From NCBI RefSeq assembly GCF_963506605.1, contig NC_083294.1, forward strand, positions 33,108,001-33,172,000: a stretch of 64,000 nt of DNA, in the 5' to 3' direction. This DNA is from Zootoca vivipara. Lineage: Eukaryota. Made by a program: the position numbers and the translations under genes. The notes beneath the pieces were generated by a model. The model was not told the DNA's origin. It saw nothing but the letters and a program-made list of their open reading frames with translations, and did not search any database. Position 1 is the first letter of the stretch; each line of letters begins with the position of its first letter. Below, one piece after another: positions 701 through 52,835 of this stretch.

Positions 701-888
701 AGGGAGGGACAATAACTCAAAAATTGAAAGCATGCTTTGCATGCAGAAAGTCCTATGTTCAATCACTGGCACCTCCAGTTAAAAGGATCAGGCAGCAGGG
801 CTAGGAGAGGGAGCACTACTGGTCACAATAAAGAATACTGGATGTGATACATAGACAGGCTGACCTGGTATAAAGCAACTTCTCATGC
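701..888 (+). mobile_element. degenerate tRNA-derived SINE (Squam3-like)
   Basis: gcatgctttgcatgcagaaagtcc...gttcaatcactggcacctccagttaaaaggatcagg...tataaagcaacttctcatg resembles the recalled Squam3 consensus. Confidence 0.7.
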
Positions 889-1321
889 TGCTATTAGAAT
901 GAATTGTGAAACCTGTGTTCCTTTGTTGGGACGGTCTTAGGTTCTGGACCTTCTCTGTCAGACATAGGTGCTCAGAGCAAGCATTACATTCATATTATTT
1001 CTATAGGGCATGTGGTTTTGCTCTATGTCTTCAGATAGATAGATCCTATGGTAAGGAAGGGACAATATGAGCTCAATCTCATTCAAGACACATGCAGAGA
1101 GAAGACTGCAAAGAACAATGGCATGACAACTGGGGGGGGGGGACAGGACGGGACGGACAAAAGTGGTTCCCTATAGAAGATTTTAGGAATAAGAATGAGA
1201 GCCTGCAGGAAACACCAACATAGAATGCAGAAAGTTAAACAAATCCATGCTTCTACAGTAACTAAAGGAGGTTTGCAATCCTGCTGTAGCTAGACCCTTA
1301 CATCTGGATGTGGACAAACCA

Positions 1322-2668
1322 TCCTATATAATAAAGTGCAAGTGTCTCTGCGTCCAGATTCCCTGTGTCCCGTTTTCCGCGCTAATGCGCATGTGCCCCA
1401 GGGACACAGGGATTGGACGAAGAGACTGCAGGGGCACACTTGAAAACTTCCAGCGGCGTTGGACGGGACTCTCAGCGTTCTACAGCCTAACGGAAGGAGA
1501 GCAGAGAGACCCAGACGCAAAGGAACGAACGCCTCCCAGCATAAAGCCCTGAAGCCAGAAACGGCATTAGAGCGGTAAAGTTTCTACTATTGTTTTTAAC
1601 CCAATAAAATAACCTGGCACTTGGAAACAAAATGACTATGAAATATTGAAGCGCTTTTAGTGCCAGAGTAAACTGGAAACTAATGAATACCGGGGGAAGC
1701 GGAGAAGGAAAGGAAATTGTTCCGTTTGTAATCCAACATCGCGCAAGAACGCAAAGGGTTCGGCAATAAAAAGAAGGGGAAAAGATTGCTGCAAAGGAGG
1801 AAAACAAACAACACTCGCAGTCTGTGTGTGTGGAGGAGAGAGAGAAAGTGGGGCCCCAAAACACCCTGGAAAATAGAACTGAGATATAAACGGGGAGCTT
1901 GGAAAAAGACTGTTCCCAGACTAAAGCAGAGGTAGAAGCAGCGGAGACATTTTAAAACAGAGTCGGACTTTCAGAGGAAAAAGAATATAAATCACTACCT
2001 GAAACAAAGATGGAGCAGTGTGGAGCGATGAAGGGTTGGGAGTACTGAGCAAACAACTGAGAGGAAAGGAGAGAGCGCATACAAAGAGAGACACCACGAT
2101 CGGAAAAAGGAAGAAATTGCAGACAGCGACAACAGAGGAACAACAGGAGAATAAGAGTAGAAGGACTGAGTAAACCAAAAGATTGGAGCAGCGACACCGG
2201 TGGTTGGACCTGGAACTACATGTGAATAAAATGACGGCAACAAAGAAAACAGTGTACGGTGCGGCAACTAGCCAACAGGGGAGATATATAGATTCCCCCC
2301 TTCTTTTTTCTGTTGTGTAGGTTTTCTTTCTGTATTTTCTCCCCCCCCCCTTTTTTGGTTCTTGTCCCCCCCCCCCGCTTTGTCTTTTACATTTTTGTAT
2401 TTTCGATAGCTATTGATGGTCGATATGTCTGTATATGTGTATCATTTGAATTTATAACTTTTAAAACAATAAAGAATTTATATTTCAATGTGGCCAGAGC
2501 CCCCTGCAGGGCACTTTGGGCAGCCTCCCGAGGCAGGATCGCCGCGCTCCTCACCGCCGCCTGCTGCTGCTGCTGCTCCTGGGCGCTCCTTCTGGCCTTG
2601 GAGGCCCAGCACCCTTATCAAACTCACTGTTCTAGCACCCGTTAATTTAACGGGCTTCAAGATACTAG
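1322..2668 (+). mobile_element. non-autonomous Helitron, complete, with cargo
   Basis: A|TCCTATATAATAAAG 5' end; subterminal hairpin CCCGTTAA-T-TTAACGGG (2638-2654); CTAG|T 3' end; no TSD. 5' end shared with the copy ending at 44235. Confidence 0.85.
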
Positions 2669-3056
2669 TGAAGTAATAATATGCGACCCTGCATTACAGT
2701 GCTGAGAATAATAATTGATTGAGTTAAAAATGCATTAACAGTTTACCATTACCGTATATTCTTCTGTAGTACAAACAGCCAAACTTCATCCCACGACATA
2801 ACCCTAAAGCAAATCTTTTGTATGTTGATTGACTCACAATGTCTGTTGTTGACATAAAACAGTAGCTTAGCTTTTGAACATCTTTCACAAAAGCTCATCT
2901 GCCTCCATTGCCAGTTGACAAAACTATCAATTTCTGGTCAAATGTTTGTTGTGCATTTAATTCTACGGTGCAATGTGTCTTTATTAACTTCTTTAAAATA
3001 TTTTAATGAAAGACAGAAAGAAATCAGTGGTACAATGGACAATTATCCTAACAAGC

Positions 3057-3060
<4 letters not shown>

Positions 3061-3107
<47 letters not shown>
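3061..3107. repeat. (GA)n microsatellite
   Basis: Seen directly. Confidence 0.98.
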
Positions 3108-8200: not shown

Positions 8201-8957
8201 GAAAAAATAAATAAATCTCCAATTGGTTGAGCATACTCCATCAGACAAAGGCACATAAGCTCGGTTAATACCATCTATGGAGATGCTAGAAGTATGTGTT
8301 CATGTGTATCTGATGCTGTAAGTGTGTGTTTTCGTCAATAAAGAATTAGCAGTCGGTCGTTTGTTTTCCTTGACTGGGTGTGCTCAAGACACCCCCATGA
8401 GTGGAAGAACAAACAAGTTACAACCATGGACAAAGAATGCCATGTGAGATGACTGACAACACATTGTACCTTTCTGTTCCTTTGGCCAACTGATTTGTCC
8501 CAGAGAGGGTTCTAATGTGGTAACACAATGAACAAACCAGTCATAAATAAGTTGCAGCACAGCAGTTAATAGGAGTTAAGCTTGGACTACAGATGTGCAC
8601 TACCTCCCAACCAACAACCATGCCTCATTTTTACAAAAGTGTCAAGTATCTTTGAGTACCTCCAATTACTTGATTTCAAATTATTTTTATGTTCATCTAT
8701 CAAAATTAAAGTACAGAAAGGTGGTGATTTCCAGTTACAACAGATTTGTAAAAATACAATAAAAATATGTTCTGTTTTCTTAAAATCATATGGTTAAAAT
8801 TGCATGTAGTGAGATTATACTCCGAGAACTGTTTGCAGACTTGGTGTATGCAAATTGCAGATAGTTACACAACAGATTAAGGCTTGCTGCTGGCAATATG
8901 GATCAACATGCTCAGCAAATGGCTGAGCAGTATTGATAATTCTAGGCAATTTGAATA

Positions 8958-10290
8958 CCGTGTTTCCCCCTTTTTAATACGTACTCAAAAAGTAAGGCAT
9001 GGCAGGGTTTTTAATCGTTTGAGAAATGTAAGACATACCCTGAAAATAAGCCATACTTCCGCGACGTGCGGAGCAAGACCACTGAGCGCCTCAGCCAGCT
9101 AGCGGGACCCAGCACGGTGGCCACAACAGGAGGAGGAAGCCTGCCGGGTTGGGTCGGTGCCCGGAAGCGGCGGCGGCTGCTGCAGCGCCGATAAAGCGTG
9201 CAGCAGTGCCGCACAGAGCACCGAGGGCACAAGCCAGCAGGACCCAGCTCCTGCAATGCCGGCCGTGGCAGGAGGAGGAAGCCTGCCAGGTCAGGTTAGC
9301 GCTCAGAAGCGGCGGCGGCTGCAGCGCTGACAAAGCGCGAAGCAGCGCCGCACTCTCTGTGTGCGTGTCCATCCCTTTCTCTGTGTGCGCGCGCGTCTCT
9401 CTCTCCCTCCCCGTGCGTCTTTCTCTCTCTCCCCCCCCTTTCTCTGTGTGTGCGTGCGCGTCTCTCTCTCTCTCTCCCTACCCGTGCGTCTTTCTCTCTC
9501 CCCCCCTGTATGTTTGTGATCACGTCTCTTCCCCCCCCCCCCGACAGAGAAAAGGTGCCACGCAGGTTCCTCTTCGGCTTGTCATTCAGCTGCCCCGGCC
9601 TCCTTGCCGAGAGCTGATGCCGCTCCTCTCCCCCTCCTTCCCTTTCCCCCTCCCTTCCCTTCTTTCCGTCGGTCTGTCAGTTGGGGTAGCGCGCGCCAGA
9701 GGCGCAGGCCCAAGCCTCGTCCCCCTCGCGCTTCCCTCACGAGCGTCTCGGAGCGGGACGGGTCCCGGCCTCCCTCCTCATTCCCCAGCCAACATGAGAG
9801 AGCCTGGGGAGCAGCCTCTATACCTCCGCGCGCACACCCACACACCCGGCCGCCTCCGCCTTCGAAGCCATGGGAGATGAGCAGCCTCCCAGTGCTCCCA
9901 CCCAACCGCAAGTGCTTTGACTGCGACCAGCGCAGTCCCACCTACACCGACATGAAGGTGGGCAGCTTCGTGTATACCTCCTGCTCCGGCATCCTACGAG
10001 GTTTAAATCCACCTCACAGAGTGAGGTGTCTGTCTCCTAGGCAGGTGGCCATCCAGCCTCTGCTTAGAAGCCTCCAAGGAAGGAGAGCCCTTGATTCAGG
10101 ATGGGGAGGAGGGAAAACGAATAGAAGAGGCAGAAAATGCGCGCGGAAGAGAACGCCAAGCGTCCTGAGCCAGTGGGACCCAGTTGTGCCGGCACTTAAA
10201 AAAAAAAGACACCCCCTGAAAATAAGCCACCGTGTGTTTTTTTGAGGCAAAAAAGTTGTAAGACGGTGTCTTAAAAAAGGGGAAACACGG
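8958..10290. mobile_element. non-autonomous Tc2/pogo-like TIR transposon carrying captured host sequence (Pack-TIR)
   Basis: TA|CCGTGTTTCCCCCTTTTTAATAC...GTCTTAAAAAAGGGGAAACACGG|TA. Subterminal motif AAGACA..CCCTGAAAATAAGCCA near both ends. CpG-rich interior, no transposase. Confidence 0.88.
9871..10024 (+). pseudogene. captured fragment of an AGFG1/AGFG2-family ArfGAP (HRB/RIP) gene, zinc-finger region
   Basis: EMSSLP(VLP)PNRKCFDCDQRSPTYTDMKVGSFVYTSCSGILRGLNPPHRV versus recalled human AGFG1 DMTGLPHNRKCFDCDQRGPTYVNMTVGSFVCTSCSGSLRGLNPPHRV. Third zinc-ligand Cys is Tyr. Exact paralog not resolved. Confidence 0.9.
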
Positions 10291-11321
10291 TACTCCCTGA
10301 AGGCAAGCATCCTATTCTGGGCCATGTTTTTTTCATCCATCCCTCATGATGCACTTAATTACAACAACCCACAAGTAGCCACTGGGCAAGACATAAGCAA
10401 GAGCCCAATCTAAGATGGGTGAAAGTGAGAAAAGGTTGGTGGGAAATTTCTGTCTCACATATAATTCTATACACATGTATAAGACAGCTATGAAAAACAA
10501 ACAAACCATGACCCACGTGAAAAATGTATTGGTATTCAAAATCTAGGGAAAAACTCCACACAACAGATTGCATTTTAAGACCTACAAGCAGATTTCAATT
10601 TATGGAAAGTGCAATATTGCCTCTTCCTTTCCATCACAATACTTGGCAACACCCCTCAACAAAATGCTACTCCTGAAGTTGGGGATCACACTATTTCCAA
10701 CTTGACACTTTTACTCCCCCCCCCCCAAAAAAAATCTATTCCATAACATTTTAGGATTTATTTGCAAAAATGTTTTTTAATATATATATTTTTCAAATTA
10801 TGAATCTCTAAATGCATTTTTATACTTTTCCTCTGAATTGAGAACTGCAGCTGGATGAACAAATGAATAGAAATCAATTGACCCCCACCACAGAAGTGGA
10901 AAAGTTTTCATTTCTGCAAGCACCTCTTTGAATCCAATTCAGCTGTTCTTGCATCATAAAGAGACTTGTGTGTGATATGACGCTTACACACAGTTCCTGA
11001 TTTCCTGATAGGTCAGAGAGTTCCATGCTTTCCTTAAGCTCTACTTAAATCAATGGGGCTTAAGTGCATATTAAGTATACAGAACATTATTAGACCATGC
11101 TAAGAAGAAGCTAGTTGTTTATTACTGTCATCCTATCAGAGGCATCTAAAATTTTAAATAGTTTTTTTAACAATTAAAGAATATCGCCTAGATACCGGTA
11201 GGAGATATGGCACCTTATAAACTTTATGAAAACAAATCACTGTACATTTTTTTTTGGGGGGGGGGATTAACAAAAATTCCAGCTGTAAATTAGAATATTA
11301 GTTAATAATCTGAACTAGTTG

Positions 11322-11457
11322 NNNNNNNNNNNNNNNNNNNNNNNNNNNNNNNNNNNNNNNNNNNNNNNNNNNNNNNNNNNNNNNNNNNNNNNNNNNNNNN
11401 NNNNNNNNNNNNNNNNNNNNNNNNNNNNNNNNNNNNNNNNNNNNNNNNNNNNNNNNN
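11322..11457. other. assembly gap (136 N)
   Basis: Run of N. Confidence 1.
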
Positions 11458-11775
11458 GAACACCTCGGTTTATGAATTTTCAGTTTATGAATGCCGCGGA
11501 CCCATCTGGAACAGATTAATTCACTTTCCATTACTTTCAATGGGAAAGTTCGCTTCAGTTTATGAACGCTTCAGTTTATGAACAGACTTCCGGAACCAAT
11601 TACACCCATGCTTCAGTTTATGAACGCTTCAGTTTAAGTACTCTGTGGACCCATCTGGAAAGGATTAATCCACTTTCCATTACTTTCAATGGGAAAGTTC
11701 GCTTCAGTTTATGAACGCTTCAGTTTATGAACAGACTTCCGGAACCAATTGTGTTCATAAACCGAGGTACCACTG
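11458..11775. mobile_element. pogo/Tigger-like MITE with internal ~150-bp tandem duplication; left end runs into the gap
   Basis: Right end CCGAGGTACCACTG|TA. Same family as 21898-22219, inverted. Followed by (TA)n to ~11832. Confidence 0.85.
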
Positions 11776-11779
11776 TATG

Positions 11780-11836
<57 letters not shown>

Positions 11837-11919
11837 AAAGAACATAGTAAGAAAGAAATGCAGTAAGTGTAGAAATAAATAAATTTATTTAAAAACATAA
11901 GGGAGAGGGGGATACTCAC

Positions 11920-12084
11920 CATGAACAGTGTCCGGAATGCACTTATATCTCCAAAGAATTCCTCAATGCTGACAGTTTTGGGATCGAAACAGAAGTAGTC
12001 CCCCAAATTGTCATATAACTTGGTCATGTTGTTGTGCATGTTAGATAACTTTTCATACTGCTCTCTAGCACTCTTCGCAAAGCT
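11920..12084 (-). CDS. DIAPH2: DIAPH2 internal coding exon, FH2 end (165 nt): [55 protein letters not shown]
   Basis: Part of ORF 11755..12090. Resembles recalled human DIAPH2 [55 protein letters not shown]. AC acceptor upstream; ATG|GTGAGT donor at 11919. Confidence 0.95.
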
Positions 12085-12104
12085 GTACACTTAAAGTTAA
12101 GGAA
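12085..12104 (-). promoter_or_regulatory. U12 branch point and AC acceptor (TTCCTTAACtttaagtgtAC)
   Basis: Exact U12 branch consensus, branch A about 12 nt from the 3' splice site, no polypyrimidine tract. Confidence 0.93.
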
Positions 12105-14501
12105 GTTCAAATAAAATCAGTAGCAAATCAGTTTAAAACAAGATTGCTTTATCACTTAAATGCATTCTTCCTAATTATTGAATTTGTTAATTGATGGCTT
12201 TATATAGAAACCATGCTTCACATATTCTAATATGCTTTAAGCACAATAAAATCCACCAGGCATTGTGTTTCACATGTGCCCAACAAAACTTTACTTTCTA
12301 TAGAACTGTTGATTGTATGGCATGGTACGCAGGTTGTGCTCCTTGAGTCTGGTCTTGACCAAAGTGTGAACACTGAACCTGCAAAGAATAAGGAAATAAC
12401 ACCACTTATAGAAACACATTTTCCCCATGAGATCAGCAGCAAGTCTTACCAGATTTATTTATTTAAAAGTGGTTATACTTATAACACAACAAGAAAACAA
12501 CACATAAGCCATGGTCAAAAAACAATGTAAAAGATTATCTGATTACAATGCAGAGAGAGAGAGATCCCACATAGTAATGTACAGATAATAGCAGCTATCT
12601 ACTGTCTTCTTCTTTTTGCCATTTTTCTTAGCTATCACAAGACATTAAAGGTGAATACATCTGGAACAAAAAGGCAGATGACCACCATTGGTTTAGAAGG
12701 TTCTTACATTTATCTATTCACACTTTGAAGTCAGGTGCAGGGAAACCACCAGAATAGGTTGCAGGAAAGCTTTTTTTTTTAACCATCAAAATGGTCAGAT
12801 ACAAATAGGACATACATAAATAAGAATTATGGACTTAATTGCCTCTAATCCTACAACACTGCAGCTCTATTTGCAGGCTATTTCAAACACAAGTAGGGAA
12901 CCCTAAAAATTGAGGTAGAGCAATTAAATGTATACTTAATCCTCCCAGCAGAATAAGTAGCTTACAATATTTTAGAAGTGGGGGTGTTAGCAATACAAAA
13001 ATTTGTTAAAACATGTGCTTTTTTCAGTGCTATTGGCTGAATATTACTGTGCCTTCCCATGCAGTGAAGTAAAATTAAACAAGGAATGGTTTGCATTGTT
13101 CCAAGTGCCACTATTCTGTTATAGCAAGCACACTGCAGCTTTTTATTAGCAACTGAAGAGGACTGGAAATCAACCTGAGATCTACTTAACCTTCACAACA
13201 ATTGCAGTTACAAATTGCATAATTGTTACCTAAAGCGGAAGGAAGCAATCCCACACAGAAGTTAGACTTTTAGAACAACGTGAAAGCAAATAAAGGTTAA
13301 CATTCTATTAAGAGAATAATTAAGGCATATTGCTCCCATTCTTGTTTCAAATTAAATAAATGCTTCATTAAAAGTTGTTGAAAATGTAGCTTTTCATTTT
13401 AACCAATGGCAGGATGAATGGTTGTGTTACAGTGGTGGGTTTGGCCTTGAACAAGCTGCTATTTGCAAGTGGCACACTGACTTTGGAAAGGTTTTCCATA
13501 TCAGGTGTAGCAGGTAACAACAGGGCTGCTCACTCAAGCATTTGACTAAAGGGTGTTTCTCACCTGGTTAACATAGTTGTGTCTATGTATATTGTTGATT
13601 TACTTAAGCTGTATTTAAATGAAATGTTCCTTTATTGTAATTTAATGTTGTATCTTATTCTGGGATTGCGTGAACAATGAATCAGTTAAATAAATTAAGT
13701 GTTCACTGCACACCAGTACCACATTTTCCGTATTTCTGCCAATGTTCTTCTAGCACACCAAATCTTTAAAAGTCAGGCCAATTTATATATCTTTCTGTCT
13801 ATAAAACTGCTGTTTAGATCTACACAACATAAAAACATCCAAATACAAAGCACACAGAAAGGGGATGCATGTATTTACACAAAGGTATGCACTCATATTT
13901 TAGACTCGACCTGTCAAAGTTTTGGCTTCTGTTTTAAACCTTTTTAAGAATGTAATCTTGATGTGCTGTAAATAGAGTGATAAACTATAGAGTCTTCCAG
14001 TGATATATTCTACTTACTATTTTTGGTAACTGATTTCTAATAAAAAATGAAGCAGCTCTTAAAATTGTGTTTGGGGTGGTGGGGCAATGGATCAAACATT
14101 CATAGTTCCTTTAACGTAAAGAATTATAGACAAACCATTGCAGAGAAAAATGGTAAAAAACACTTTTTAGAGTTGAAACTACAATAAGGTTTCAGACATT
14201 AAAGAGGGTTGGGACAAAATGAAGAGCAAATTATATATATCTGTGATCCAAAGAACTATGAACACAGCTCCAAGAGTCTAAGTGGGCTATGGACTTCTAT
14301 TTCCTTCAAAGAGCAGTTCTGCATCACACACACCCCATCATACCACAGGTTAACGTATTTTGAAACCCAGGAGCTTCAGAATCTGTCATGTAAGGTTGAT
14401 GGACAAAGACTAGAGATATCTTGATTCAAAAATCTGCTCAGCCACAAAACTTACTAAGCTTTTTGCTAAGTGCTTTTTGCCTTAACCTAACCTGATGCAT
14501 A

Positions 14502-14858
14502 GGGACGCGGGTGGCTCTGTGGGTTAAACCACTGAGCCTAGGGCTTGCTGATCAGAAGGTCGGCGGTTTGAATCCCTGCGACGGGGTGAGCTCCCGTTGC
14601 TCAGTCCCAGCTCCTGCCAACCTAGCAGTTTTAAAGCACGTCAAAGGGCAAGTAGATAAATAGGTACCACTACAACGGGAAGGTAAACGGTGTTTCCATG
14701 TGCTGCTCTGGTTTGCCAGAAGTGGCTTTGTCATGCTGGCCACATGACCCGGAAGCTGTATGCCGTCTCCCTCGGCCAATAACGTGAGATGAGCACGCAA
14801 CCCCAGAGTTGGTCACAACAGGACTAATGATCAGGGGTCCCTTTACTTTTACCTTTAC
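14502..14858 (+). mobile_element. Sauria SINE, full length
   Basis: GGGACGCGGGTGGC tRNA-like head, (ACCTTT)-type tail, TSD cctgatgcatag. Confidence 0.95.
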
Positions 14859-15350
14859 CCTGATGCATAGGATGGCTGATATGTTGAAGAAGTTTGGGAA
14901 TGATGGAGGAAACCATGTACACTGCTCTACACTGGGTAGAAAAAATAATAAACACAATTTTCTCAGTGGCTAAAAGTGTCAAAAAATCCATAAAACCTAT
15001 AACATAACACAAGATTTAGAAAACAAACAACCTTTAATGCAAGATACAGAAATGCATCTAAACTATGTAATAATGTTGTCTCTCTTGACTGCTAAGATGC
15101 AGGCAAGTGAGGTTTCTATTATTCAGCTGTCAAGGAACTCCCATTTCGAAATGTCGAGTGCCTACTGCGCATTTGTCTTTTCCCTGTGGAGGAACTGTAT
15201 GAGGGGATTTCACTTGCTCACTTTTATCAGACCTGCTTCCATCTTAAAGTGGTTGTCTTCTCCTCTTATTAGCAGAAAGTAAAAGCCAACAGGCAGGGAA
15301 ACAAGCAAAAAGGGGAAGCTGTGTAAAGGAACTGAGAGGAAGAAATTAAA

Positions 15351-15400
<50 letters not shown>

Positions 15401-15401
<1 letters not shown>

Positions 15402-15552
15402 CCAGTAGCACCTTAGAGATCAACTATGTTTGTTTGTGCATGCACATGAAAGTTCATACCAAGAACAAACTTAGTTGGTTTCTAAGGTGCTACTGGACAA
15501 TATTTTTCATTTTTAAAATATATTTCTACTACGGCAGACCAACACGGCTACC

Positions 15553-15553
<1 letters not shown>
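15401..15553. mobile_element. Penelope-like element terminal fragment inside an (ATT)n microsatellite
   Basis: Inverted repeat tccagtagcaccttagagatcaacta / tagttggtttctaaggtgctactgga, ending cagaccaacacggctacc. A related fragment lies at ~62258-62325. Confidence 0.75.
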
Positions 15554-15596
<43 letters not shown>

Positions 15597-15742
15597 TATA
15601 CAAGTTGGCTGTTGCATATGGATTTGTGCTAAATATCAGCCAGTCATATTACAATATGAAGAGAATTTGTTGCCAACAAATTTTGTTTTACAAAAGCGTG
15701 TCTGATCTGTGACTGCACCTGGGTGTCTGCTAAGAAGTAAAT

Positions 15743-16102
15743 TGTGACGTGGGTGGCACTATGGTCTAAACCACAGAGCCTAGGGCTTGCCGATTGGAAG
15801 GTTGGCGGTTAAAATCCCCGTGATGGGGTGAGCTCCCATTGTTCAGTCCCAGCTCCTGCCCACCTAGCAGTTCAAAAGCACGTCAAATGCAAGTAGATAA
15901 TAGGTACCGCTGCGGTGGGAAGGTAAACGGTGTTTCTGTGCGCTGCTCTGGTTCGCCAGAAGCGGCTTAGTCATGCTGGCCACATGACCCGGAAGCTGTC
16001 TGTGGACAGACGCCGGCTCCCTCGGCCTATAGAGCAAGATGAGCGCGACAAACCCAGAGTCGTCCGGGACTGGACCTAATGGTCAGGGGTACCTTTACCT
16101 TT
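15743..16102 (+). mobile_element. Sauria SINE, full length
   Basis: Same body as the 14502 copy; TSD taagaagtaaat. Confidence 0.95.
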
Positions 16103-19100
16103 TAAGAAGTAAATACTTCTCTTTTTAGAAGGCCTTTGGGCTGCAAAATCTTGCAGAGCATGGGTTTTTACATTATATAGGTGTACCTATTAAAAACAAA
16201 AATGTGATTCTGCTCTCATTGTTTCCTCTTTGTCACAACACTGAGCTAGTTTACTCAAATTCATACTTTTGGAGACTTTTAATAAATATTTTAAAAGTTA
16301 GCAAGCTGGTGGACGTTATTCCGGTTACTAAATTAAGTATGTGTAGAAAAGAGAGAAATGCTTTACAAAGCCTGCAAACAATGAAGATATGAATGGAATG
16401 ACGTGGCGAGGGAGGGATATCTTTCACAGCAGGCAGCATACCATTGTCAGCATAGAATATAAAGGACTAGGGAATAACCCGATGGAATAAATTGGCACTG
16501 ACACCGAAGTGAAGAGGGAAGTGACAAACGAACAGCTTCCAGAGAACAGCTGACATAACTAATTTAAAGGGAACATGTGAAAGAGTTTTCAAGTTTTCTC
16601 CTTCATACCACATACTTCATAATACGATATGGAAGCTGCTGTTTTCTGAAGATTTTTTTTTTAATAGTGCACACTGGTCCCAATATGAATTAAACAGACT
16701 TACAGAACAGCAGGAAGACTACATGGTGCTATTATTAAAGAAGGGAAGTGTCACTTTCCAATATGCATATCCAAATATTCTTATTGACTCTGGATAAACC
16801 ACCACTTACAAATCCATGAAAGCTCTGCAGACTTCTACCAGTTCGTTTTTGTAGCTCGGTGGAACAGAAAGGGAAAGAAAATGAAAAGGGCAGCTGGACA
16901 ACAACCTTCCTTTTGTGGGAGAAGGCAACAAATAAGGACATGCTTCTGAACAATAATTCTGCTCGAGGTGTAATTTGAAACATTTTATGTCTCAACTAAC
17001 ACCTGTGCTTTGTTAATTTCCTTCATTTTTTGCTGCATATTTGACAGTAAACACCACTATACAACTGGATGTTTATTAATCACTGTGTGCTGCCAGTGGT
17101 GGGAAAAGAAAGGAAGGGGTTGGAAGAGGTTTGCAACTCATGCAGAGCCACTTCTCAATGAAAGAACCCCAAACAATCATAGGGAACAAAGAACAACTTG
17201 CTATTTATAAATATAAAATACACTGCAGTAGCTAAGTAAAATAACACAAGTAAATGTTTCTCTTTAAAAACCAAGGTTTGCTATAGTAACAACAACATAA
17301 GCAACACAAACAAAAGATTGACCATTGACATGCATAGCATTATGATGAAATGAAGTGACCTCGCTATATAGTTCTTTCATTAACAAAAATACATGAATAT
17401 TCAGTAGGAAGAGTGGGAACAAAACAATTTGGTTTTCCTATGTCCTGTTCCTTGCAGAAATCACAAGGCAGATGTAGCACATATATGACATGTATAAATG
17501 TTTTATGTGCTTCTCACAGTTTACCACAACCCTTTTTCAATGATGTCATCCATTAATTCCAGATTGTGAAGCTTAGTAATCACCAGCAACTCTTACCGAT
17601 AATCCCTCTCAACAAATTGTTAATTCATACAACTGTACAATCTAATTGGCTCCTAGCTTAATGCAGTTGTCATTTGAGGTGCTTGCGGCAAGCACAAATT
17701 ACTGTCTTGAATGCCAGAATATCATTTTAAAACAAATAGGCAAGCCTTGTCAAACCTTGACCCTAACAGTCGAATCATTTGTGAATGATGACTTCGAAGA
17801 AAGCACTACTTAATTTGAAGCGAGTTTCTCCAAATTAAGTATGGACAGGAGCATAGCCTAAACCATGTTAAACAGGACATGTTGATACACTGATATACAG
17901 AACTGAACTGGCCACAGCAGTAATATAAACAGAGGCAAATAAAATAAACCTTGGACAGAATTTTTTTACCTAAAGTTAGACTTTTAACCTAAGCAGATTT
18001 CATTAGAAATTACTTTCAAAGCAACTGACACTAACTTTGGAAGCAACTTTCCTCACATATGGCTCACTAAGCTGTGGCACATAAGACTCCATGCCAAAAA
18101 AGGAAATAACAAATGAATTAACTAGTAAGCTCATGGGAAACACTCTGATATTGGAACTGCATTTGGTCTTAGCCAAAAGGCTGAGTAATAGTAATTTAAT
18201 GTTTGACACTCCAAAAAGTTTAACTGAGTGTGTTTAATGAAGGCACACTGAAAATTTGTGTATCTCTCACTTCATAAATATCTGACCTTTTCTGGCCTTG
18301 CTGTAAAGCCTGGTTTACACAATTAGTAAATACATTAACACAAATACATTTACCCATTTTAAATCTTAATGAGCAATGGTAAAATATATTTGTGAACCCT
18401 GGTTTGTGCAAGAAGATTCAATAACTGAGAAAGATCAACTAAGAAACAAAGCAAACTTTGACATTTGGGTTACTCCTAATGTAGCATCTAAAAAGTGATT
18501 CACAAAACTTCAGCTGCATTGGTTCCTGATTTCACTGTGGATGATATCTATGAGTATACACTTCACATGATTTGTTACAACATTGTTATGCATGTTGAAA
18601 CTGGCTCTCACAAATACTTAATTAAGAAAACTGACTGCAGTGGAAGGCACCAATTACACCACTTTTTCTGTCAGAAAGTGTTTTTCTGAAATCAAATAAT
18701 TCTTTACATGTTATCATGAAGATTCTACAAGAGCAGTAAACTAAGCTTGGTGAGAGAGAAAATGGCATTCATTTAATGATCACATTGCACTGGTGTAAAT
18801 CAGTCATGAAGGTAGAACGTGTTTCAATTTTTCTCTAAGAGGGCATAATCAAGAGTTTATTCATCTTACAATAAACATGAAGTTTGTTTGGAACGAGTTC
18901 AGCAACTCAGTCACACCAATATAATCAGACCCCGTTTCCTCTCCCCTCCCACCCCTCTCTCCACTCCATGGGAAGATGAACATAGAGAGTAACAGGGTGG
19001 TATGTTAAATATCATGTATTCTGGCACTTCTTTGCTTATGCTAAGCACCTGTTTAGTTTAGTTACAATTCTCAAGACTAGGTTCTATTAGCTCAACTTGT

Positions 19101-19560
19101 GTAGTATGGCAAGTCTGGATTGGCACTGCTATTATTCCTAGAGATCCAAAGCAGCTCAAAAGATTGAAAAACTGCAACAAATTGGGAGATGAAACCACAC
19201 AAAAAACTGCCAGCATAGAGGAAATGGGGAGGAGGGGGAGAGATGAATGAACATGCTGAAACACACGCACACAATTTTAAAATATTGAACACAAAAAGGG
19301 AGACAGCCCTTTCCAAAAAAGGGAAGTCCTCCCATACAAAAAACCCACTTTTTCCTTTGAAGGAAAAAAGGAGGAGGAAAACAACAGAAAGAAAATATAT
19401 GAGCTGATCTAGAAGCAGGCAGGATCTTTCACAGGTGAGGAGAAGGCATCATGCCAGTTGAATCATGACAACAGGCCCTCTTTTATTTCTGCCAGGAATG
19501 TGCACCACCATCTTTATTACAGGACTCTTCTGATCAATTACTGTCAAATTCAAAATCTCC

Positions 19561-19870
19561 TAAATAAATAAATAAATAAATAAATATACTCCACCCATCT
19601 GACTAGGTTGCCTAAGCTACTCTGGGTGGCTTCCAATATACAAAGCACAACAGAACATCACACATTAAAAGTTTCTTGATACAGGGCTGCCTTCAGATGC
19701 CTATGGAAGGTTGTATAATTATTTATTCCTTTGACATTTGGTGGGAGGGTGTTTGCTTGGTTCCCTGTAACTTCATACCTCACAATATGGCCCTCGGAGC
19801 TGGACCTCAGTGTCTGGGTTAATGATTGGGGTGGAGATGCTTCTTCAAGTATAAAGGGCTGAAGGTGTTT
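19561..19870 (-). mobile_element. older L2 3' fragment
   Basis: Diverged match to 6940-7290 with an (AAAT)n tail. Confidence 0.8.
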
Positions 19871-20644
19871 ACAATTTTATTCATGTATCCAAAAGCATAG
19901 AAATAGTTAGGGCTTCTGTGCCGTACCGTCTACGTTTGAGAAAGAAGTATAGACTCTCTCCTTGTTAAGTATGACAACTTAACACAAATCAGACTGTACA
20001 TCTGAAATGGGGAGCCTCTACATGTTGTTAAGCTTTAACAGTCAACAGCCAGCAGCACCAGCCAGTATGACCAATAGCCAGGACTGCTGGAAGCTGAAGT
20101 CCAACAACATCTGAAACATCATCACAGGTCCCTTGTTCCTGATACACATCTAAATAATTACTGAAAATGTAAAAGAAAATATTTTAAACAGTTGGTGTCT
20201 GCTGCCACATCAAAATGTATAATTTAGTTAGAGTACAAAGATGTACTCCATCCACGATTCAGCTAGTTCCTTTAAATATTTCAAAGAGCTTGGGTGAACC
20301 CCAAAGGAATCTGATGGTGGGATCTACTTTCAGCTGTCATCCCAATCATGGTTGGGATTCTTTTTGCAGCTTAATCCTTTAAAGAAGAATCACAAGCTAA
20401 GAAGGGTCAATGTGATGGCTGAAGTGCACTGGTACAGACATTTGGTACATAATGTAGACTGAATGTAATAGATTGCCAGATAAGTGGTGGATTGAAAGCA
20501 AATTCTGACATTATAAAAACTCCATGATATCTGCTGACATACTCTAGCAAAAATGCATTATAAGTAGCTACGCCACAGAATGCTCACACTGTCACTTCAC
20601 AGTGGGATTCTTTTCCTTTGGGACTAAAGTTATTTTACTATATA

Positions 20645-20725
20645 CCATATTTTTCCATGTATAAGACTAGGTTTCTTTCCTAAAAATAATGTAAAAAAAA
20701 AATAGGGGTGTCTTACACATGGATA
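20645..20725. mobile_element. Tc2-like MITE end fragment
   Basis: TA|CCATATTTTTCCATGTATAAGAC...GGGGTGTCTTACAC. Confidence 0.55.
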
Positions 20726-21897
20726 GTGCCAAGGATAGACTGGTGATTGGTTGTTGCCACAGAAGCAGAATTCTGTGTAAGGCAGAAAAAAGGGGTAATA
20801 AAAGATACCATGGTGTCTGGAGCAAATATGTGCAATCTGACTGTTATCCATGTTCTCTTTCCCTTTTTTCATATAAGGTTGAACAAGATTTTGAATATTA
20901 CAAGATGGACAAATTATGCATATTTAATTCCACCCACCTATAACAGGGAGCAAGATTGAAAAAGAAGTCAGAAGAGTTTAAACACGTACAGTTAAACAAT
21001 GAATTACATCTCCAATATTTGAAGTTAAAAAGTAAGAACTGTATGAAACACTCTAATTTAAGAGCCTGGTGACCTTTTGGTACCAAGATATGAAAGAATA
21101 AAGATTGGAAATGAAAACGTGGGTTTTGTTTCTTTTAGAAATAATTTTTCATCTCTGGAAAGTATAATATGGTAATTCATCATCATTCAAAGAAATAAAA
21201 AATACACTACAATTTAAGCACTTGTGATTTGCAGAGTTCATGCTATAAATGCTTTGGCCCTATCTTGGCAAAGAAACATTTTGTTTGATTCTTCCTTCAA
21301 GGATTTTCAGAAGAACCTTGTATAAAACATATCTACACTGGAAAATATACATATTTCCAATACTGCAGATAATAAAGCCTTTGTGGGAAGCATTCTATTA
21401 TTTTTTCTTCTGAATATATACCGTACATCTTTGCATTCTTTATTCTCTACAGTAGACTCAAGTAAAGGCTATAACTAACAGGCAGTACTCATGGTTTGCA
21501 TTTATGAAACCACACAATTTCTATTTAATGAAAAACTCTTCTCTATTAATATTGCCAGGATGGTTGCATTGAGTCATTGACAAAATTTGGGTGAGACAGA
21601 AACATTTCAAATAAGAAAACTATGACTACTGCTCTGTCTTTGTATAAGCAAGTTTGCTACGGCTCTACTTCCTATGAGCATTCATATGTGTTCAAAATAA
21701 GAGACAGGTAGATCAAAGTTTGCATTTATACAAACCAAAATTAAACAAGTTAAGAAGAACCTTGCTGGATCAGGTCAGAGGCCCATCTAGTTCAGCACCA
21801 TGTTTTCATAGTGGCCTACAATATTCCTATGGGAAGCCTGAACACTGGACCCAAGGGCAACAGCATTCTCCACTTGTATGATTTCTAGCAACTAGTA

Positions 21898-22219
21898 CAG
21901 TGGTACCTCGGTTTACAATCACAGTTGGTTCCGGAAGTCTGTACTTAACCTGAAGCGTACTTAACCTGAAGCGAACTTTCCCATTGAAAGTAATGGAAAG
22001 TGGATTAATCCGTTCCAGACGGGTCCGTGGAGTACTCAACCTGAAGTGTACTTAACCCAAAGTATGAGTGTAATTGGTTCTGGAAGTCTGTACTTAAACT
22101 GAAGCGTACTTAACCTGAAGCAAACTTTCCCATTGAAAGTAATGGAAAGTGAATTAATCCATTCCAGATGGGTCCACAGTGGTTGTAAACCGGGGCGGTT
22201 GTAAACCGAGGTATGACTG
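21898..22219. mobile_element. pogo/Tigger-like MITE nested in a CR1-like fragment (~21750-22270)
   Basis: TA|CAGTGGTACCTCGGTTTAC...GTAAACCGAGGTATGACTG|TA; internal dimer. Confidence 0.88.
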
Positions 22220-23054
22220 TATTCATACACATATTATCTCTGATACAGTACTGAAAGCAGCATTCTACCACAATTTTTCTCCATGGCAGCAAATAATTTA
22301 CCAAACACAAAATATGGTAAGAAAAATGGAACTCTGGTGTACTTTCCCTGGACAGTAGATTAGAAAAAAAACAAAAAAAAACCTGCCACAATATATAGAG
22401 AAAACTTCATCAGTAGAACAAATAAATAAAATGCTTATTTATGATACAGCATGAAACTTAATATTGTGTTCTGCTTTCACATTAATTAAACATGACTATT
22501 TGGATAACACTTAAAACATGTCACAAATTGCTTACTAAAAATGATGAGAATCTGGCACAAATGCCAAGCAATCTGGGAACAGGACCCAATGGCATTTTCA
22601 ACCAGTGCCCTTGTCAATCAAACTCTAAACCTGAGGGCAATTTTCTCATCCTGATAGACTTGGTTCCCTCCCTTTTTCAGTTTTAAAATATTTTTTTTAA
22701 AAAAATATTATTTATTGTATTTACTTTATAAAATTTATACATTGCTTGATTGTAAAAAGCCTCAATGTGGTTCACAGAAAGATAAAACAATAAAATCAAG
22801 AAGAAAAAAACATGTAACCATGCTTTAAAAGAAATAGGTTCTGAGTCAATAGTTTTCACAGCCACCACTTTGGGCCCACAATTTGACAAGTGGAAAAATT
22901 ATCTGAAACATCAAATCCCTACCAGCCCTCTATCCCAACAGTGAATGAATGCCAATAGGTTACAGCCAAACTCTTAATGTTAACATTTCTCTACTCATCT
23001 TATGCTCAGGTCTATGCTCTGATAAACTCTATATTTTGAGTTGCTTCTGAAGAT

Positions 23055-27315: not shown

Positions 27316-27781
27316 TTAACAGCTGGGTCAGCAAAACTCTTAACAGCTCTCGATTGGGCTACTAGGAACTTTACAGTACACAATTAAGGAAACACTTTGG
27401 TATAAACCTAAGAGAAATAGGCATGATTGATAGGTTTAGGCCTCTACAAAAGAAATTTATAAACTCTGGTTTCATTATTTCCAAATTTTCTCGAATGATT
27501 TCAGTTTTAAGAAATGGTTTCGTAGGCAACAAATTTCAATCATTTTTAGATTCTGTGCAGGATCAAATTACTTCATATAAACAGGCAGCAATAGCAAAAT
27601 GAAATTCTTGCTGTGAATTTCTATGCTCAAGGCTTGGTTTACTTGGGGGATTTAGCTATCTGCCCCTCACTCACTGCCACACCACATAAAGAATAGTTAA
27701 GTGCTATATATTTTAATCCACAAAACTATTTGTTGAGCCTTTAAAGCTCAACTCTTTAAAGATACTTTTCCAAATATTCCT

Positions 27782-28416
27782 CCTGGAATACTGTGCTTGG
27801 TTCTGGGTGTCACAATTTAAGAAGGATATTGACACGATGTAATGTGTGCTGAGGATGGAAACCAAGCCTTATGAAGGCCAAGGGAGCTGGGTATGTTTAG
27901 CCTGGAAAAGAGGAGATTTAGAGGAGATATTATAGTCAGGGTGTTTCTCTCCCCCCCCCCCCAAGTAGGAACTCACAAGAACTCAGTTCTGGCATCTTTC
28001 AGGTGGGCACCATTGCACCATTGCAAGAGAACAAGGGAGGTGTTCATGGTGAGTACTGGCAACTCTTTTTCTTGAAAAATAGCACTGATTATAACCATCT
28101 TCAAATAACTAAAGGGCTGTGGCACAAAAGATGGAGCAAGCTTGTTTTCTCCCGCTCAGAAAGGTAGGAGCCATACTAAAGAATTCAAGTTACAGGAAAG
28201 GAGATTCCGACTAAACCTCAGAAAAGAACTTTCTGACAGTAAGAGCTGTTCAATAGTGGAGCGGGCTCCCTCAGGAGGTTGTGGACTCTCTTTCACTGGA
28301 GGTTTATACAGAGGTTCGATGGCCATCTGCCATGGATGCTTTAACTGAGATTCCTGCATTGCAGGGGTTTAGACTAGATGACCCTCAAGTTACCTTCCAA
28401 CTCTGCAAGTCTATGA
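27782..28416 (+). mobile_element. CR1 3' fragment containing a nested hAT-like MITE (27937-28087)
   Basis: LGMFSLEKRRFRGD...FKLQERRFRLN CR1 C-terminus. MITE CAGGGTG...GCACTG has imperfect TSD attatagt/attataac. Confidence 0.85.
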
Positions 28417-29459
28417 AACAGCTCTGTACTGAAGCAAAAGAAATGCACAGTTGGTCTGAAGTGCATATATATATGATATATCAGCATATTATTTGAAACA
28501 AAAGGAACTTGTAAATGAAAGTATACAGGGTATGATAATCTTTATTTAGACATGTTAAAGCACATATAATGTATTTTATAGTAGACACATTTAAGCCATT
28601 TTAATACTTTGAAAATCAAGGTATGTCTCTGACAGCAAATAATTTAGTCTGACGAATGTAAGATTTCCATGCAACCTTTTATATCTTAGAAATCCAACTT
28701 AATTTACACATTATGCTATTAGTTCAAGTTACCAATACTTTCTGGAAGAACAAAGAATAAAATATAGAGTAAGAATACAATCATTCCTGGTTATTTTAGA
28801 AATCCACATCCTGAATGACTTTCAAAGATGTTTCAGCTGCCACTTCACACGTGTAAATTTGTATGGTATTTGTCATCATCTCACATTTAAGTATTCCTTC
28901 ATTACATTTATGTGAACAGCATATTTGCTCTGGGGATCGCAAGGGCAAATTTTAGATATTTTGATATTTTATTATTCCCTGTCCATTTTTCAGCTCTCCC
29001 TAGGCTTCCTATTATTGCTCTATCCACCCTACTGTTTGCATTATCTGTAAATTTAATTAAAGTTCTCTCTAGCTTTCTCTGCAGATCTCATATAAAGGAC
29101 TTAAATAAAGTTGGTTCCAACATGGATCCCAGAAGTACCCCCACTAAACATGTCAGGGTAATAATATATTGCTATTCATTACCTTTCTTTTAGGTTCCCC
29201 CAATTTCATTCTGTAATAAAAACAAATTAAAGACTCCACTTATTTTGACCATCTACATTAACAAGTGCTACATGATAATATCACTGCTTTTACTCATAGT
29301 TAGCTAGGAAGTCATAGTGGGTGTAGATTGAGACCACAAATCCAAATGCAACCCACCAGCCATTTGATTGATAATGCACCTCTATTTGCAGTTAAAATAG
29401 GATTTAGTCTATGGCTGAAGAATTGCTGCTGCAGGACATGGCAAAAATGTGCAATGATA

Positions 29460-52623: not shown

Positions 52624-52835
52624 NNNNNNNNNNNNNNNNNNNNNNNNNNNNNNNNNNNNNNNNNNNNNNNNNNNNNNNNNNNNNNNNNNNNNNNNNNNNN
52701 NNNNNNNNNNNNNNNNNNNNNNNNNNNNNNNNNNNNNNNNNNNNNNNNNNNNNNNNNNNNNNNNNNNNNNNNNNNNNNNNNNNNNNNNNNNNNNNNNNNN
52801 NNNNNNNNNNNNNNNNNNNNNNNNNNNNNNNNNNN
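52624..52835. other. assembly gap (212 N)
   Basis: Run of N. Confidence 1.

What the first reader, a model, noticed from the sequence alone, without database searches (positions are those of the whole stretch)
8958..10290. Gene-capturing TIR transposon with mosaic CpG-rich cargo
Seen between Tc2/pogo-like TIRs and a TA duplication: a ~140-bp GC-rich dimer (~9100-9353); a CT/GT minisatellite (~9353-9545); UTR- or promoter-like CpG sequence (~9545-9870); an AGFG-family coding fragment (9871-10024); and ~55 bp of antisense CR1 (~10037-10090, similar to the reverse complement of ~28270-28330). Established: Pack-MULE and Pack-TIR elements assemble fragments from several loci, but vertebrate examples are uncommon. 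Inference: a lizard Pack-type family that builds chimeric sequence and plants CpG islands in introns. This is the best candidate for an undescribed system in this window.
Basis: partly seen in the sequence, partly recalled or inferred. Interest (0 to 1): 0.85.

Follow-up and report, generated by a model that had tools for sequence, protein, structure and literature searches.

The report
Mobile lizard transposon carrying spliced AGFG1 start
A 1.3-kb cut-and-paste transposon in a lizard carries a dead, intron-less copy of the start of the AGFG1 gene. It seems to have multiplied to tens of copies and is missing at this site in another animal of the same species, so it moved recently, which is rare for such elements in land vertebrates.

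Summary
Window 8958-10290 is one TA-flanked element with 23-nt terminal inverted repeats (TIRs) and a CpG-rich interior.

- **One insertion.** Contigs from two related species and from another individual of the same species join 8955 directly to 10291. They skip exactly the element plus one TA. The whole 1,333 bp therefore arrived as one insertion, and that insertion is still polymorphic.
- **Cargo.** At least 9498-10035 derives from AGFG1: 5' leader, start codon, a damaged exon 1 and the first 40 nt of exon 2. Exon 1 and exon 2 are joined without intron 1, so this piece went through spliced RNA.
- **Other fragments.** Positions 10040-10087 are a 48-nt piece of a very abundant interspersed repeat.
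The "GC-rich dimer" is not cargo. It belongs to the transposon family's own backbone.
- **Copy number.** Summed contig depth over the AGFG1 part is about 16-60 times single-copy in this species. It is about 1x or less in the two relatives.
- **Expression.** RNA data show no expression of this copy.

This is a multicopy, recently mobile Pack-TIR (a TIR transposon carrying captured host sequence) with RNA-derived cargo. That is an unusual variant of a known kind. The scan had already noted the same family with the same cargo at two other places in this genome (s1-856131, s1-848836). How the cargo was captured, and whether it has any promoter role, remain unshown.

The parts
8956..8957 (.). Left copy of the TA target-site duplication
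   Evidence: Sequence. The empty-site joint 8955->10291 skips 1335 = 1333 + TA, with 3 ambiguous letters.
8958..8980 (+). Left terminal inverted repeat (CCGTGTTTCCCCCTTTTTAATAC)
   Evidence: 21 of 23 complementary to 10268-10290.
8958..9060 (+). Left terminal and subterminal backbone of the family, including a CCCTGAAAATAAGCC motif at 9038-9052
   Evidence: Summed contig depth 98,000-128,000 against 50.5 single-copy in X1. Short family members join 9054-9056 directly to 10200-10259. Motif.
9061..9353 (+). GC-rich internal module of the family, two ~140-bp units. This is backbone, not cargo.
   Evidence: Repeats D2, D3 and D5 and alignment. Depth 12,000-23,000 in X1. Several contigs join 9276-9281 to 10198-10202.
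9354..9497 (+). CT/GT-rich low-complexity block; origin unresolved
   Evidence: The test for derivation from the adjacent AGFG1 leader was not significant.
9498..9869 (+). AGFG1 5' region (leader-like, CpG-rich)
   Evidence: tblastn of P0032, a genomic read-through ORF of a genuine AGFG1 exon 1 with its upstream DNA: 9571-9996 E 4e-27 and 9498-9869 in a second frame E 5e-7.
9870..9995 (+). AGFG1 exon 1 coding remnant. It has a likely start codon at 9870-9872, then about 50 nt missing (frameshift), a 9-nt insertion (LPVLPP for LPP) and a zinc-finger Cys->Tyr at 9973-9975.
9996..10035 (+). First 40 nt of AGFG1 exon 2, joined to exon 1 without intron 1 (junction 9995|9996)
   Evidence: Six genomic read-through ORFs (P0024, P0028, P0029, P0030, P0032, P0034) stop matching at ..SGIL (9996). 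mRNA-type proteins P0002, P0005 and P0007 match on through RGLNPPHRVKSIS to 10035.
10040..10087 (.).
   Evidence: Depth 324,000 / 115,000 / 211,000 in X1 / X15 / X19. Hundreds of contigs run on into unlike sequence on both sides at 10040-10046 and 10085-10090. Resembles the reverse complement of 28270-28330.
10088..10136 (.). Unassigned filler
   Evidence: No match found.
10137..10197 (+). Partial third copy of the start of the GC-rich module (backbone)
   Evidence: D5 copy at 10168-10184, alignment, depth ~24,900 in X1.
10198..10290 (+). Right terminal backbone: A-run, CCCTGAAAATAAGCC motif at 10214-10228, right TIR at 10268-10290
   Evidence: Depth 273,000-975,000 in X1.
10291..10292 (.). 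Right copy of the TA target-site duplication

Best explanation
Window 8958-10290 is one copy of a non-autonomous, TA-targeting TIR DNA transposon. The Tc1/mariner-pogo superfamily is assigned from the target site alone.

Its backbone is a left end, a GC-rich repeat module and a right end. That backbone belongs to a MITE-like family (short, non-coding, high-copy TIR elements) with thousands of copies. Inside the GC-rich module, a founder copy acquired about 780 bp of foreign sequence. That sequence comprises a CT/GT-rich block, about 540 nt of the 5' end of a spliced AGFG1 transcript (leader, start codon, exon 1 joined to the first 40 nt of exon 2), 48 nt of an abundant interspersed repeat, and about 50 nt of unknown origin.

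Because both ends stayed intact, the composite was still moved in trans by the family's transposase. It multiplied to tens of copies in this species. This copy inserted at a TA so recently that the insertion still segregates.

Shown: the single-unit insertion, the polymorphism, the AGFG1 origin, the intron loss, the multicopy status and the backbone status of the GC module.

Inferred: acquisition by template switching during double-strand-gap repair or replication, onto a cDNA, RNA or retrocopy template; mobilisation in trans; and the absence of any coding function, since the frame is broken and a zinc ligand is lost.
For: (1) The TIRs and TA duplication are unique in the window.

(2) The joint 8955->10291, skipping 1335 nt, appears in three places: a 1,938-nt contig of X1 (same species; 0 mismatches over 903 flank bases, and the only contig on the flanks), a 569-nt contig of X15 (species B) and a 487-nt contig of X19 (species E).

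(3) AGFG1 identity: Pfam ArfGap E 2e-10 and human AGFG1 E 3e-21. The upstream region matches P0032 at E 4e-27 and 5e-7.

(4) Intron loss: six genomic ORFs diverge or stop right after SGIL, in patterns that fit a GT-starting intron (ILWV.., or IL then stop). The window continues with exon-2 residues RGLNPPHRV, as the mRNA-type proteins do.

(5) Copy number: summed depth over 9556-10029 is 822-3,093 (10,792 in one bin) against 50.5 for the flanks in X1. In X15 it is 0-5.4 against 6.2, and in X19 0-23 against about 20. Fourteen to fifteen distinct X1 contigs cover 9787 and 9792.

(6) Backbone: X1 contigs join 9276-9281 to 10198-10202 and 9054-9056 to 10200-10259. RNA reads show the same cargo-free junction.

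(7) Youth: CpG o/e is 0.75 in the element against 0.06 in the flanks.
Against: Depth sums of Logan contigs are not copy numbers, as the tool itself warns. Low-complexity and GC-rich stretches inflate them.

No other full copy could be read here. Shared cargo boundaries among copies are therefore not shown directly.

The cargo boundaries and the 50-nt deletion rest on protein-level comparison with read-through ORFs from unnamed relatives.

No transposase partner was identified. The capture mechanism is inference only.

The cargo is fairly diverged from the parent: 9 of 63 nt differ from the species-E contig, and there are three replacements in 34 conserved codons. Capture is therefore much older than this insertion.
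Confidence: 0.8

Rival explanations
1. Nested retroposition followed by mobilisation. A chimeric cDNA (the AGFG1 5' part plus a LINE/SINE fragment, made by reverse-transcriptase template switching) was inserted by a LINE enzyme into the GC module of an existing MITE copy. That copy was later moved by the transposase. The end product is the same, but the capture step is retroposition rather than repair-associated template switching.
For: The cargo is spliced. It is directly followed by a fragment of a very abundant interspersed repeat at 10040-10087. The cargo sits cleanly between GC-module units.
Against: The cargo has no poly(A) or LINE-type tail at its 3' end. The A-run at 10198 belongs to the backbone, because it is also present in cargo-free members. 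No target-site duplication around the cargo was seen inside the element. The repeat piece is an internal 48-nt fragment with repeat sequence missing on both sides. The AGFG1 piece is 5'-terminal, whereas ordinary retrocopies are biased toward the 3' end.
Confidence: 0.25
2. DNA-level capture of a pre-existing AGFG1 processed pseudogene. The transposon copied an already intron-less genomic retrocopy by ordinary Pack-TIR gap filling or fork switching, so no RNA template was involved at the capture step.
For: Other members of this TIR family in the same genome are reported to carry DNA-level captures that include intron sequence (scan notes on ATXN7L2 and TRIM24; not tested here). The cargo is well diverged from the parent, as an old pseudogene would be.
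Against: No free-standing AGFG1 retrocopy is known here. In species E and species B the AGFG1-like depth is only about single-copy, which is accounted for by the parent gene.
Confidence: 0.3
3. Two independent MITE halves or copies that happen to flank older resident DNA, or an assembly error.
For: A TA target site is uninformative on its own. Only one element of this kind is in the window.
Against: The empty site in three independent data sets lacks both TIRs and everything between them, and it retains a single TA. The joint is exact to the base.
Confidence: 0.02
4. The element acts as a dispersed promoter or CpG island that starts transcription wherever it lands.
For: CpG-island composition: 975 bp, 65% GC, o/e 0.76. 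RNA reads over 9635-10029 are strictly one-stranded, with first mate on + at 6-16 and 0 on the other strand, and there is a small cluster of read starts at 9723.
Against: The reads carry G at 9787 and 9792, as do the family majority and the parent gene, and each has at least 4-5 further differences from this copy. Both flanks have zero RNA depth. One-stranded reads at this depth are what the parent AGFG1 mRNA would give at 84% likeness. An mRNA-derived cargo would lack the core promoter.
Confidence: 0.1

Closest known systems
Multicopy Pack-TIRs of animals (Tan et al. 2021, Nat Commun 12:4280, PMC8277862), e.g. Pack-hAT-N8_XT of Xenopus tropicalis carrying 291 bp of the CAPSL 5' UTR
   Same: A non-autonomous TIR element with a gene fragment from an unlinked parent in its interior. 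It has distinct target-site duplications, is absent at the orthologous site in an outgroup, captures GC-rich 5' sequence, and has its breakpoints inside the element rather than at its ends.
   Different: That survey found only 4 multicopy cases among 370; the one case described in detail, from frog, has three copies. It also discarded intron-less captures by design. Here the cargo is spliced, depth suggests tens of copies, and the insertion is polymorphic within an amniote species. No lizard is mentioned in that paper.
Pack-MULEs of rice and other plants
   Same: Chimeric interiors built from host gene fragments, a preference for GC-rich 5' ends of genes, amplification by transposition, and mostly non-coding outcomes.
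   Different: A different superfamily (Mutator, 9-bp duplications). Capture is at the DNA level with introns kept (my own knowledge, not checked here).
Ssk-FB4 of Drosophila melanogaster (same paper)
   Same: A young, polymorphic, multicopy DNA-transposon-borne gene duplicate.
   Different: Ssk-FB4 is a Foldback element in an insect and encodes an intact, expressed protein family. The AGFG1 fragment here is frameshifted and lacks a zinc ligand.
Processed pseudogenes and chimeric retrocopies made by LINE reverse transcriptase
   Same: Loss of the intron at the exact exon 1-exon 2 junction, and juxtaposition with a fragment of an interspersed repeat.
   Different: There is no poly(A) or LINE tail and no flanking duplication around the cargo. 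The piece is a 5'-terminal fragment, and dispersal is by TIR/TA cut-and-paste insertion.

Membership tests
Pack-TIR (transduplicating TIR DNA transposon) | Terminal inverted repeats and a target-site duplication bound the unit | tested here: met
   23-nt TIRs (21 of 23) and a TA on both sides.
Pack-TIR (transduplicating TIR DNA transposon) | The interior holds non-TE sequence derived from a host gene located elsewhere | tested here: met
   AGFG1 5' end at 9498-10035. The window's own gene is a formin on the other strand. The parent locus itself was not read.
Pack-TIR (transduplicating TIR DNA transposon) | The ends belong to a recognisable TIR TE family that also exists without the cargo | tested here: met
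   Cargo-free joints 9276-9281->10198-10202 and 9054-9056->10200-10259; end depths of 10^5-10^6 against 50.5.
Pack-TIR (transduplicating TIR DNA transposon) | The composite transposed as a unit (empty orthologous site; several copies with different flanks) | tested here: met
   Precise empty site in X1, X15 and X19. Cargo depth is 16-60x single-copy, with 14-15 distinct contigs. The flanks of other copies were not read. The scan's notes s1-856131 and s1-848836 report two further copies.
Pack-TIR (transduplicating TIR DNA transposon) | Capture at the DNA level (as the published pipelines require: introns retained) | tested here: not met
   The exon 1-exon 2 junction is intron-less. By the filter of Tan et al. 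2021 this case would have been discarded.
Tc1/mariner-pogo superfamily | TA target-site duplication | tested here: met
Tc1/mariner-pogo superfamily | A cognate DD(E/D) transposase with matching TIRs; subgroup (Tc2/pogo) by transposase or TIR consensus | not testable with these tools
   No autonomous copy in the window. No access to the rest of the genome or to a repeat library.
Processed pseudogene / retrocopy | Intron loss at exact exon junctions | tested here: met
Processed pseudogene / retrocopy | A 3' poly(A) or LINE tail and a target-site duplication flanking the retrocopy | tested here: not met
   The cargo ends in a repeat fragment and filler. The A-run at 10198 is backbone. No direct repeat brackets the cargo.
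CpG island | Length >200 bp, GC >50%, CpG o/e >0.6 | tested here: met
   9061-10035: 975 bp, 64.9% GC, o/e 0.76.
CpG island | Unmethylated in the germ line, or promoter activity | not testable with these tools
   No methylation or CAGE data. RNA reads do not come from this copy.

The most novel reading that the evidence does not exclude
A currently or very recently active Tc1/mariner-type transposon family in a lacertid lizard repeatedly picks up the CpG-rich 5' ends of genes. AGFG1 is shown here; ATXN7L2, TRIM24 and IQSEC2 are reported elsewhere in the scan's notes. In at least this case it used a spliced RNA or cDNA as the repair template. It then amplifies the composites to tens of copies. 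That would be an RNA-templated Pack-TIR pathway operating in an amniote germ line.
Probability: 0.2. Interest if true: 0.8.

Novelty: new variant of a known kind. Interest (0 to 1): 0.6.

Why it matters
Three things make this case unusual.
- **Activity.** Cut-and-paste DNA transposons are widely regarded as extinct or nearly so in most amniotes (my own knowledge). An insertion that is present in the reference but absent from a conspecific with identical flanks is direct evidence of very recent mobility in a lizard.
- **Copy number.** Multicopy gene-carrying TIR elements are very rare in animals: 4 of 370 in the only broad survey.
- **Cargo type.** Spliced cargo was filtered out of that survey by design, so this class is essentially undescribed.

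Such a family spreads CpG-rich, start-codon-bearing gene heads through the genome. It offers a natural system for asking how DNA transposons acquire host sequence, including whether RNA can serve as the template. The individual copy studied here looks inert.

Tried and rejected
All parent comparisons are at protein level.
- **Search for other copies by ORF.** The search for homologous proteins with the 213-aa spurious ORF across the cargo found only genuine AGFG1/2 proteins and exon-1 read-through ORFs, and no ORFs from other element copies.
- **Metagenome scan** for the TIR: 0 hits.
- **The search of earlier findings by sequence:** blank.
- **Rest of the window.** It holds no second copy of the TIR or of the subterminal motif. 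blastn of the element against the window gave only low-complexity hits.
- **Repeat at 27700-28900.** blastn against the window found no other copy, so the identity and orientation of the 'CR1' piece could not be settled.
- **CT/GT block.** The idea that it is a tandem expansion of the start of the AGFG1 leader is not supported: 20 of 300 dinucleotide shuffles reach the observed local score.
- **Rfam:** nothing above noise.
- **Two MITE halves or misassembly:** rejected by the empty site.
- **Microhomology at the exon 2 / repeat junction.** A possible shared motif (TCCATGACA-like) rests partly on remembered codons and could not be checked without the parent DNA, so I do not claim it.
- **Literature searches** for lizard gene capture or lacertid MITEs found nothing specific.

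Full report
**1. What is in the sequence**

Window 8956-10292 reads TA|CCGTGTTTCCCC ... GGGGAAACACGG|TA. The 14-mer TACCGTGTTTCCCC occurs exactly twice in 64 kb, once on each strand, at these two places; 0.18 matches are expected by chance. The repeat finder reports 28-nt arms at 89%. That figure includes the TA and three chance flank bases. The real terminal inverted repeat (TIR) is 8958-8980 against 10268-10290, with 21 of 23 matching. Beyond about 25 nt the two ends are not inverted copies of each other. Both carry the motif CCCTGAAAATAAGCC in the same orientation, at 9038 and 10214.

- Two GC-rich units lie 139-142 bp apart at 84-87% identity.
- A CT/GT low-complexity block follows.
- A CpG-rich stretch comes next.
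- An ArfGAP coding fragment follows (Pfam PF01412, E 2e-10).
- A short piece resembles the reverse complement of 28270-28330. blastn did not recover this at E<=1.

The element has CpG o/e 0.75. Each 500-bp flank has 0.06.

**2. It is one insertion, and a young one**

I laid Logan contigs of one run of the same species (X1), of two related species (X15 = B, X19 = E) and RNA reads of the same species (X21) on 8450-10800 at 84% likeness or better. In all three DNA runs a contig joins 8955 to 10291. It skips 1,335 nt, which is the 1,333-nt element plus one TA.

| Run | Contig length | Detail |
|---|---|---|
| X1 (same species) | 1,938 nt | No mismatch over 903 flank bases; the only contig on the flanks |
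| X15 (species B) | 569 nt | 146 nt on the shorter side of the joint |
| X19 (species E) | 487 nt | 94 nt on the shorter side of the joint |

The TIRs and everything between them are absent together, and a single TA remains. The 'two MITE halves' reading and the misassembly reading are effectively excluded.

The empty allele occurs in a conspecific with identical flanks. The insertion is therefore polymorphic and postdates the split from species B, whose flanks differ by roughly 2-3%. The undecayed CpG content agrees with a young age.

**3. What is backbone and what is cargo**

The table gives summed contig depth in X1 against the single-copy flank value of 50.5.

| Region | Summed depth in X1 |
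|---|---|
| Left end | about 98,000-128,000 |
| Right end | 273,000-975,000 |
| GC-rich units | 12,000-23,000 |
| 10109-10187 | about 24,900 |

Several X1 contigs, and some RNA reads, join 9276-9281 directly to 10198-10202. Others join 9054-9056 to 10200-10259. The family therefore exists in at least two cargo-free forms. One is a short MITE-like form (left end plus right end). The other is a medium form (left end, GC module, A-run, right end).

Positions 10137-10197 are a third, partial copy of the start of the GC unit. The GC-rich 'dimer' is thus family backbone, not captured host DNA. The foreign insert is about 9354-10136 and sits inside the GC module.

**4. The gene fragment is AGFG1, including its leader, and it is spliced**

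The 52 codons at 9871-10026 match human AGFG1 (PDB 2d9l and 2olm, 'nucleoporin-like protein RIP') at E 3e-21.

A protein search returned two kinds of relatives.
- mRNA-type AGFG1 proteins (P0002, P0005, P0007) read ...CSGILRGLNPPHRVKSISMTTF.
- ORFs called on genomic contigs (P0024, P0028, P0029, P0030, P0032, P0034) follow exon 1 to ...CSGIL. They then either stop or run on as WV..., which fits an intron that begins GTGAG or GTGGGT after the CT of the Leu codon.

tblastn shows that the genomic ORFs match the window only as far as 9996. The mRNA-type proteins match on to 10035 (window RGLNPPHRVRCLS against RGLNPPHRVKSIS). The window therefore holds exon 1 joined to the first 40 nt of exon 2, with no intron, at 9995|9996.

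P0032 also carries the translated upstream region of a genuine exon 1. It matches the window at 9571-9996 (E 4e-27). In a second frame it matches 9498-9869 (E 5e-7).

The copy is dead.
- After the likely start codon (9870-9872), about 50 nt corresponding to residues AASAKRKQEEKHLKLLR are missing, which shifts the frame.
- Nine nucleotides are inserted (LPVLPP for LPP).
- The third zinc-binding cysteine is a tyrosine (9973-9975).

**5. The other fragments**

Positions 10040-10087 belong to a repeat with depth 324,000 / 115,000 / 211,000 in the three species. Hundreds of contigs run on into unlike sequence at 10040-10046 on one side and at 10085-10090 on the other. Only an internal 48-nt piece of that repeat is therefore present. 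Its identity as CR1, and its orientation, were not tested. The window's only other copy stands alone.

The CT/GT block (9354-9497) and 10088-10136 have no assigned source. A test of the idea that the CT/GT block grew out of the adjacent leader was not significant.

**6. Copy number and distribution**

The table gives summed depth over the AGFG1-derived bins (9556-10029), with the single-copy value for each run.

| Run | Depth over 9556-10029 | Single-copy depth |
|---|---|---|
| X1 (same species) | 822-3,093; one bin at 10,792 | 50.5 |
| X15 (species B) | 0-5.4 | 6.2 |
| X19 (species E) | 0-23 | about 20 |

In X1 this is roughly 16-60 copy-equivalents. Fourteen to fifteen distinct X1 contigs cover 9787 and 9792. 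In species E a 617-nt contig matches in patches (…9570 | 9757-9819 | 9895…), as the parent gene would.

The tool warns that these sums are not copy numbers, so 'tens of copies' is an estimate. It agrees with the scan's earlier notes of two more copies with the same cargo elsewhere in this genome (s1-856131, 1,319 nt; s1-848836, 1,372 nt). I could not inspect those copies.

The TIR ends themselves are abundant in species A and B but absent from species E at this likeness (depth 0-14).

**7. Expression**

The flanks have zero RNA depth. The element's ends are covered on both strands, and most of those reads run on into other sequence, so they come from other copies sitting in other transcripts.

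The AGFG1 part is covered on one strand only, at depth 6-16. All of those reads carry G at 9787 and 9792, where this copy has A. The family majority and the species-E parent also carry G. Each read has at least 4-5 further differences from this copy. The simplest source is the parent AGFG1 mRNA, or other copies. Nothing shows that this copy is transcribed or acts as a promoter.

**8. Context**

An exon encoding the end of a formin FH2 domain lies at 11758-12090 on the minus strand (Pfam E 4.9e-11). The element lies about 1.5 kb downstream of that exon, with its cargo antisense to the gene. Whether that position is an intron was not established.

**9. Mechanism (inferred)**

A medium-length family member acquired the insert inside its GC module. 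The most likely route is template switching during gap repair or replication. That process is proposed for animal Pack-TIRs, whose breakpoints also lie inside the element (PMC8277862). In this case the template was a spliced AGFG1 RNA, cDNA or retrocopy, plus a repeat fragment. The intact ends then allowed mobilisation in trans.

Two rivals lead to the same product: retroposition of a chimeric cDNA into a MITE, and DNA-level capture of an existing retrocopy. My data do not separate them. The absence of a tail or a flanking duplication around the cargo argues mildly against simple retroposition.

**10. Comparison and novelty**

This works like a Pack-TIR and meets that definition except on one point: the cargo is intron-less. 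The only broad animal survey removed such cases as a control. That survey found 370 Pack-TIRs in 100 genomes. Only four were multicopy, and the one case it describes in detail, from frog, has three copies. It names no lizard.

A polymorphic composite with about tens of copies and RNA-derived cargo in an amniote is therefore an unusual variant of a known kind. It is not a new kind. The scan had already flagged this family on other DNA of the same genome. What this window adds is the base-exact empty allele within the species and in two relatives, the backbone/cargo dissection, and the independent protein-level proof of the splice junction.

The N runs at 11322-11457 and 52624-52835 were left alone.

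Noticed in passing
window 11758-12090 (-): An ORF whose first 56 residues match the end of the formin FH2 domain (Pfam PF02181, positions 316-371 of 372, E 4.9e-11). The window therefore lies in or beside a formin gene on the minus strand. The transposon is about 1.5 kb downstream of this exon.
   Followed up: partly
window 10188-10266: The right subterminal module (CCCTGAAAATAAGCC...GAGGCAAAAAAG) has far higher summed depth than the TIRs themselves: about 975,000 in X1 and 56,700 in X15. Many contigs and 167 RNA reads diverge after 10252-10253 into a different terminus (TAAATATAAGAC...). The module is therefore shared with a second, more abundant MITE family.
   Followed up: no
window 8924-9081 and 10188-10345, run X19: The TIR family is abundant in species A and B but essentially absent (depth 0-14) in species E, whose flanks differ by only about 6-7%. 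This suggests a lineage-restricted origin or horizontal arrival of the family.
   Followed up: no
window 10040-10087 and 28150-28450 (-): An interspersed repeat (consensus around ...AAAGCATCCATGACAGATGGCCATCCAGCCTCTGCTT...TCCACCACCTCCCGAGGGAG...) is present at 10^5 summed depth in all three lizard species and in RNA.
   Followed up: partly
window 8720 (flank): Both relatives (X15, X19) carry an 18-nt length difference at about 8719/8720 relative to the window. This is an ordinary indel in the flank.
   Followed up: no
window 1322-2668: Another first-stage note (s1-854070) calls this a Helitron family with swapped cargo. I did not examine it.
   Followed up: no
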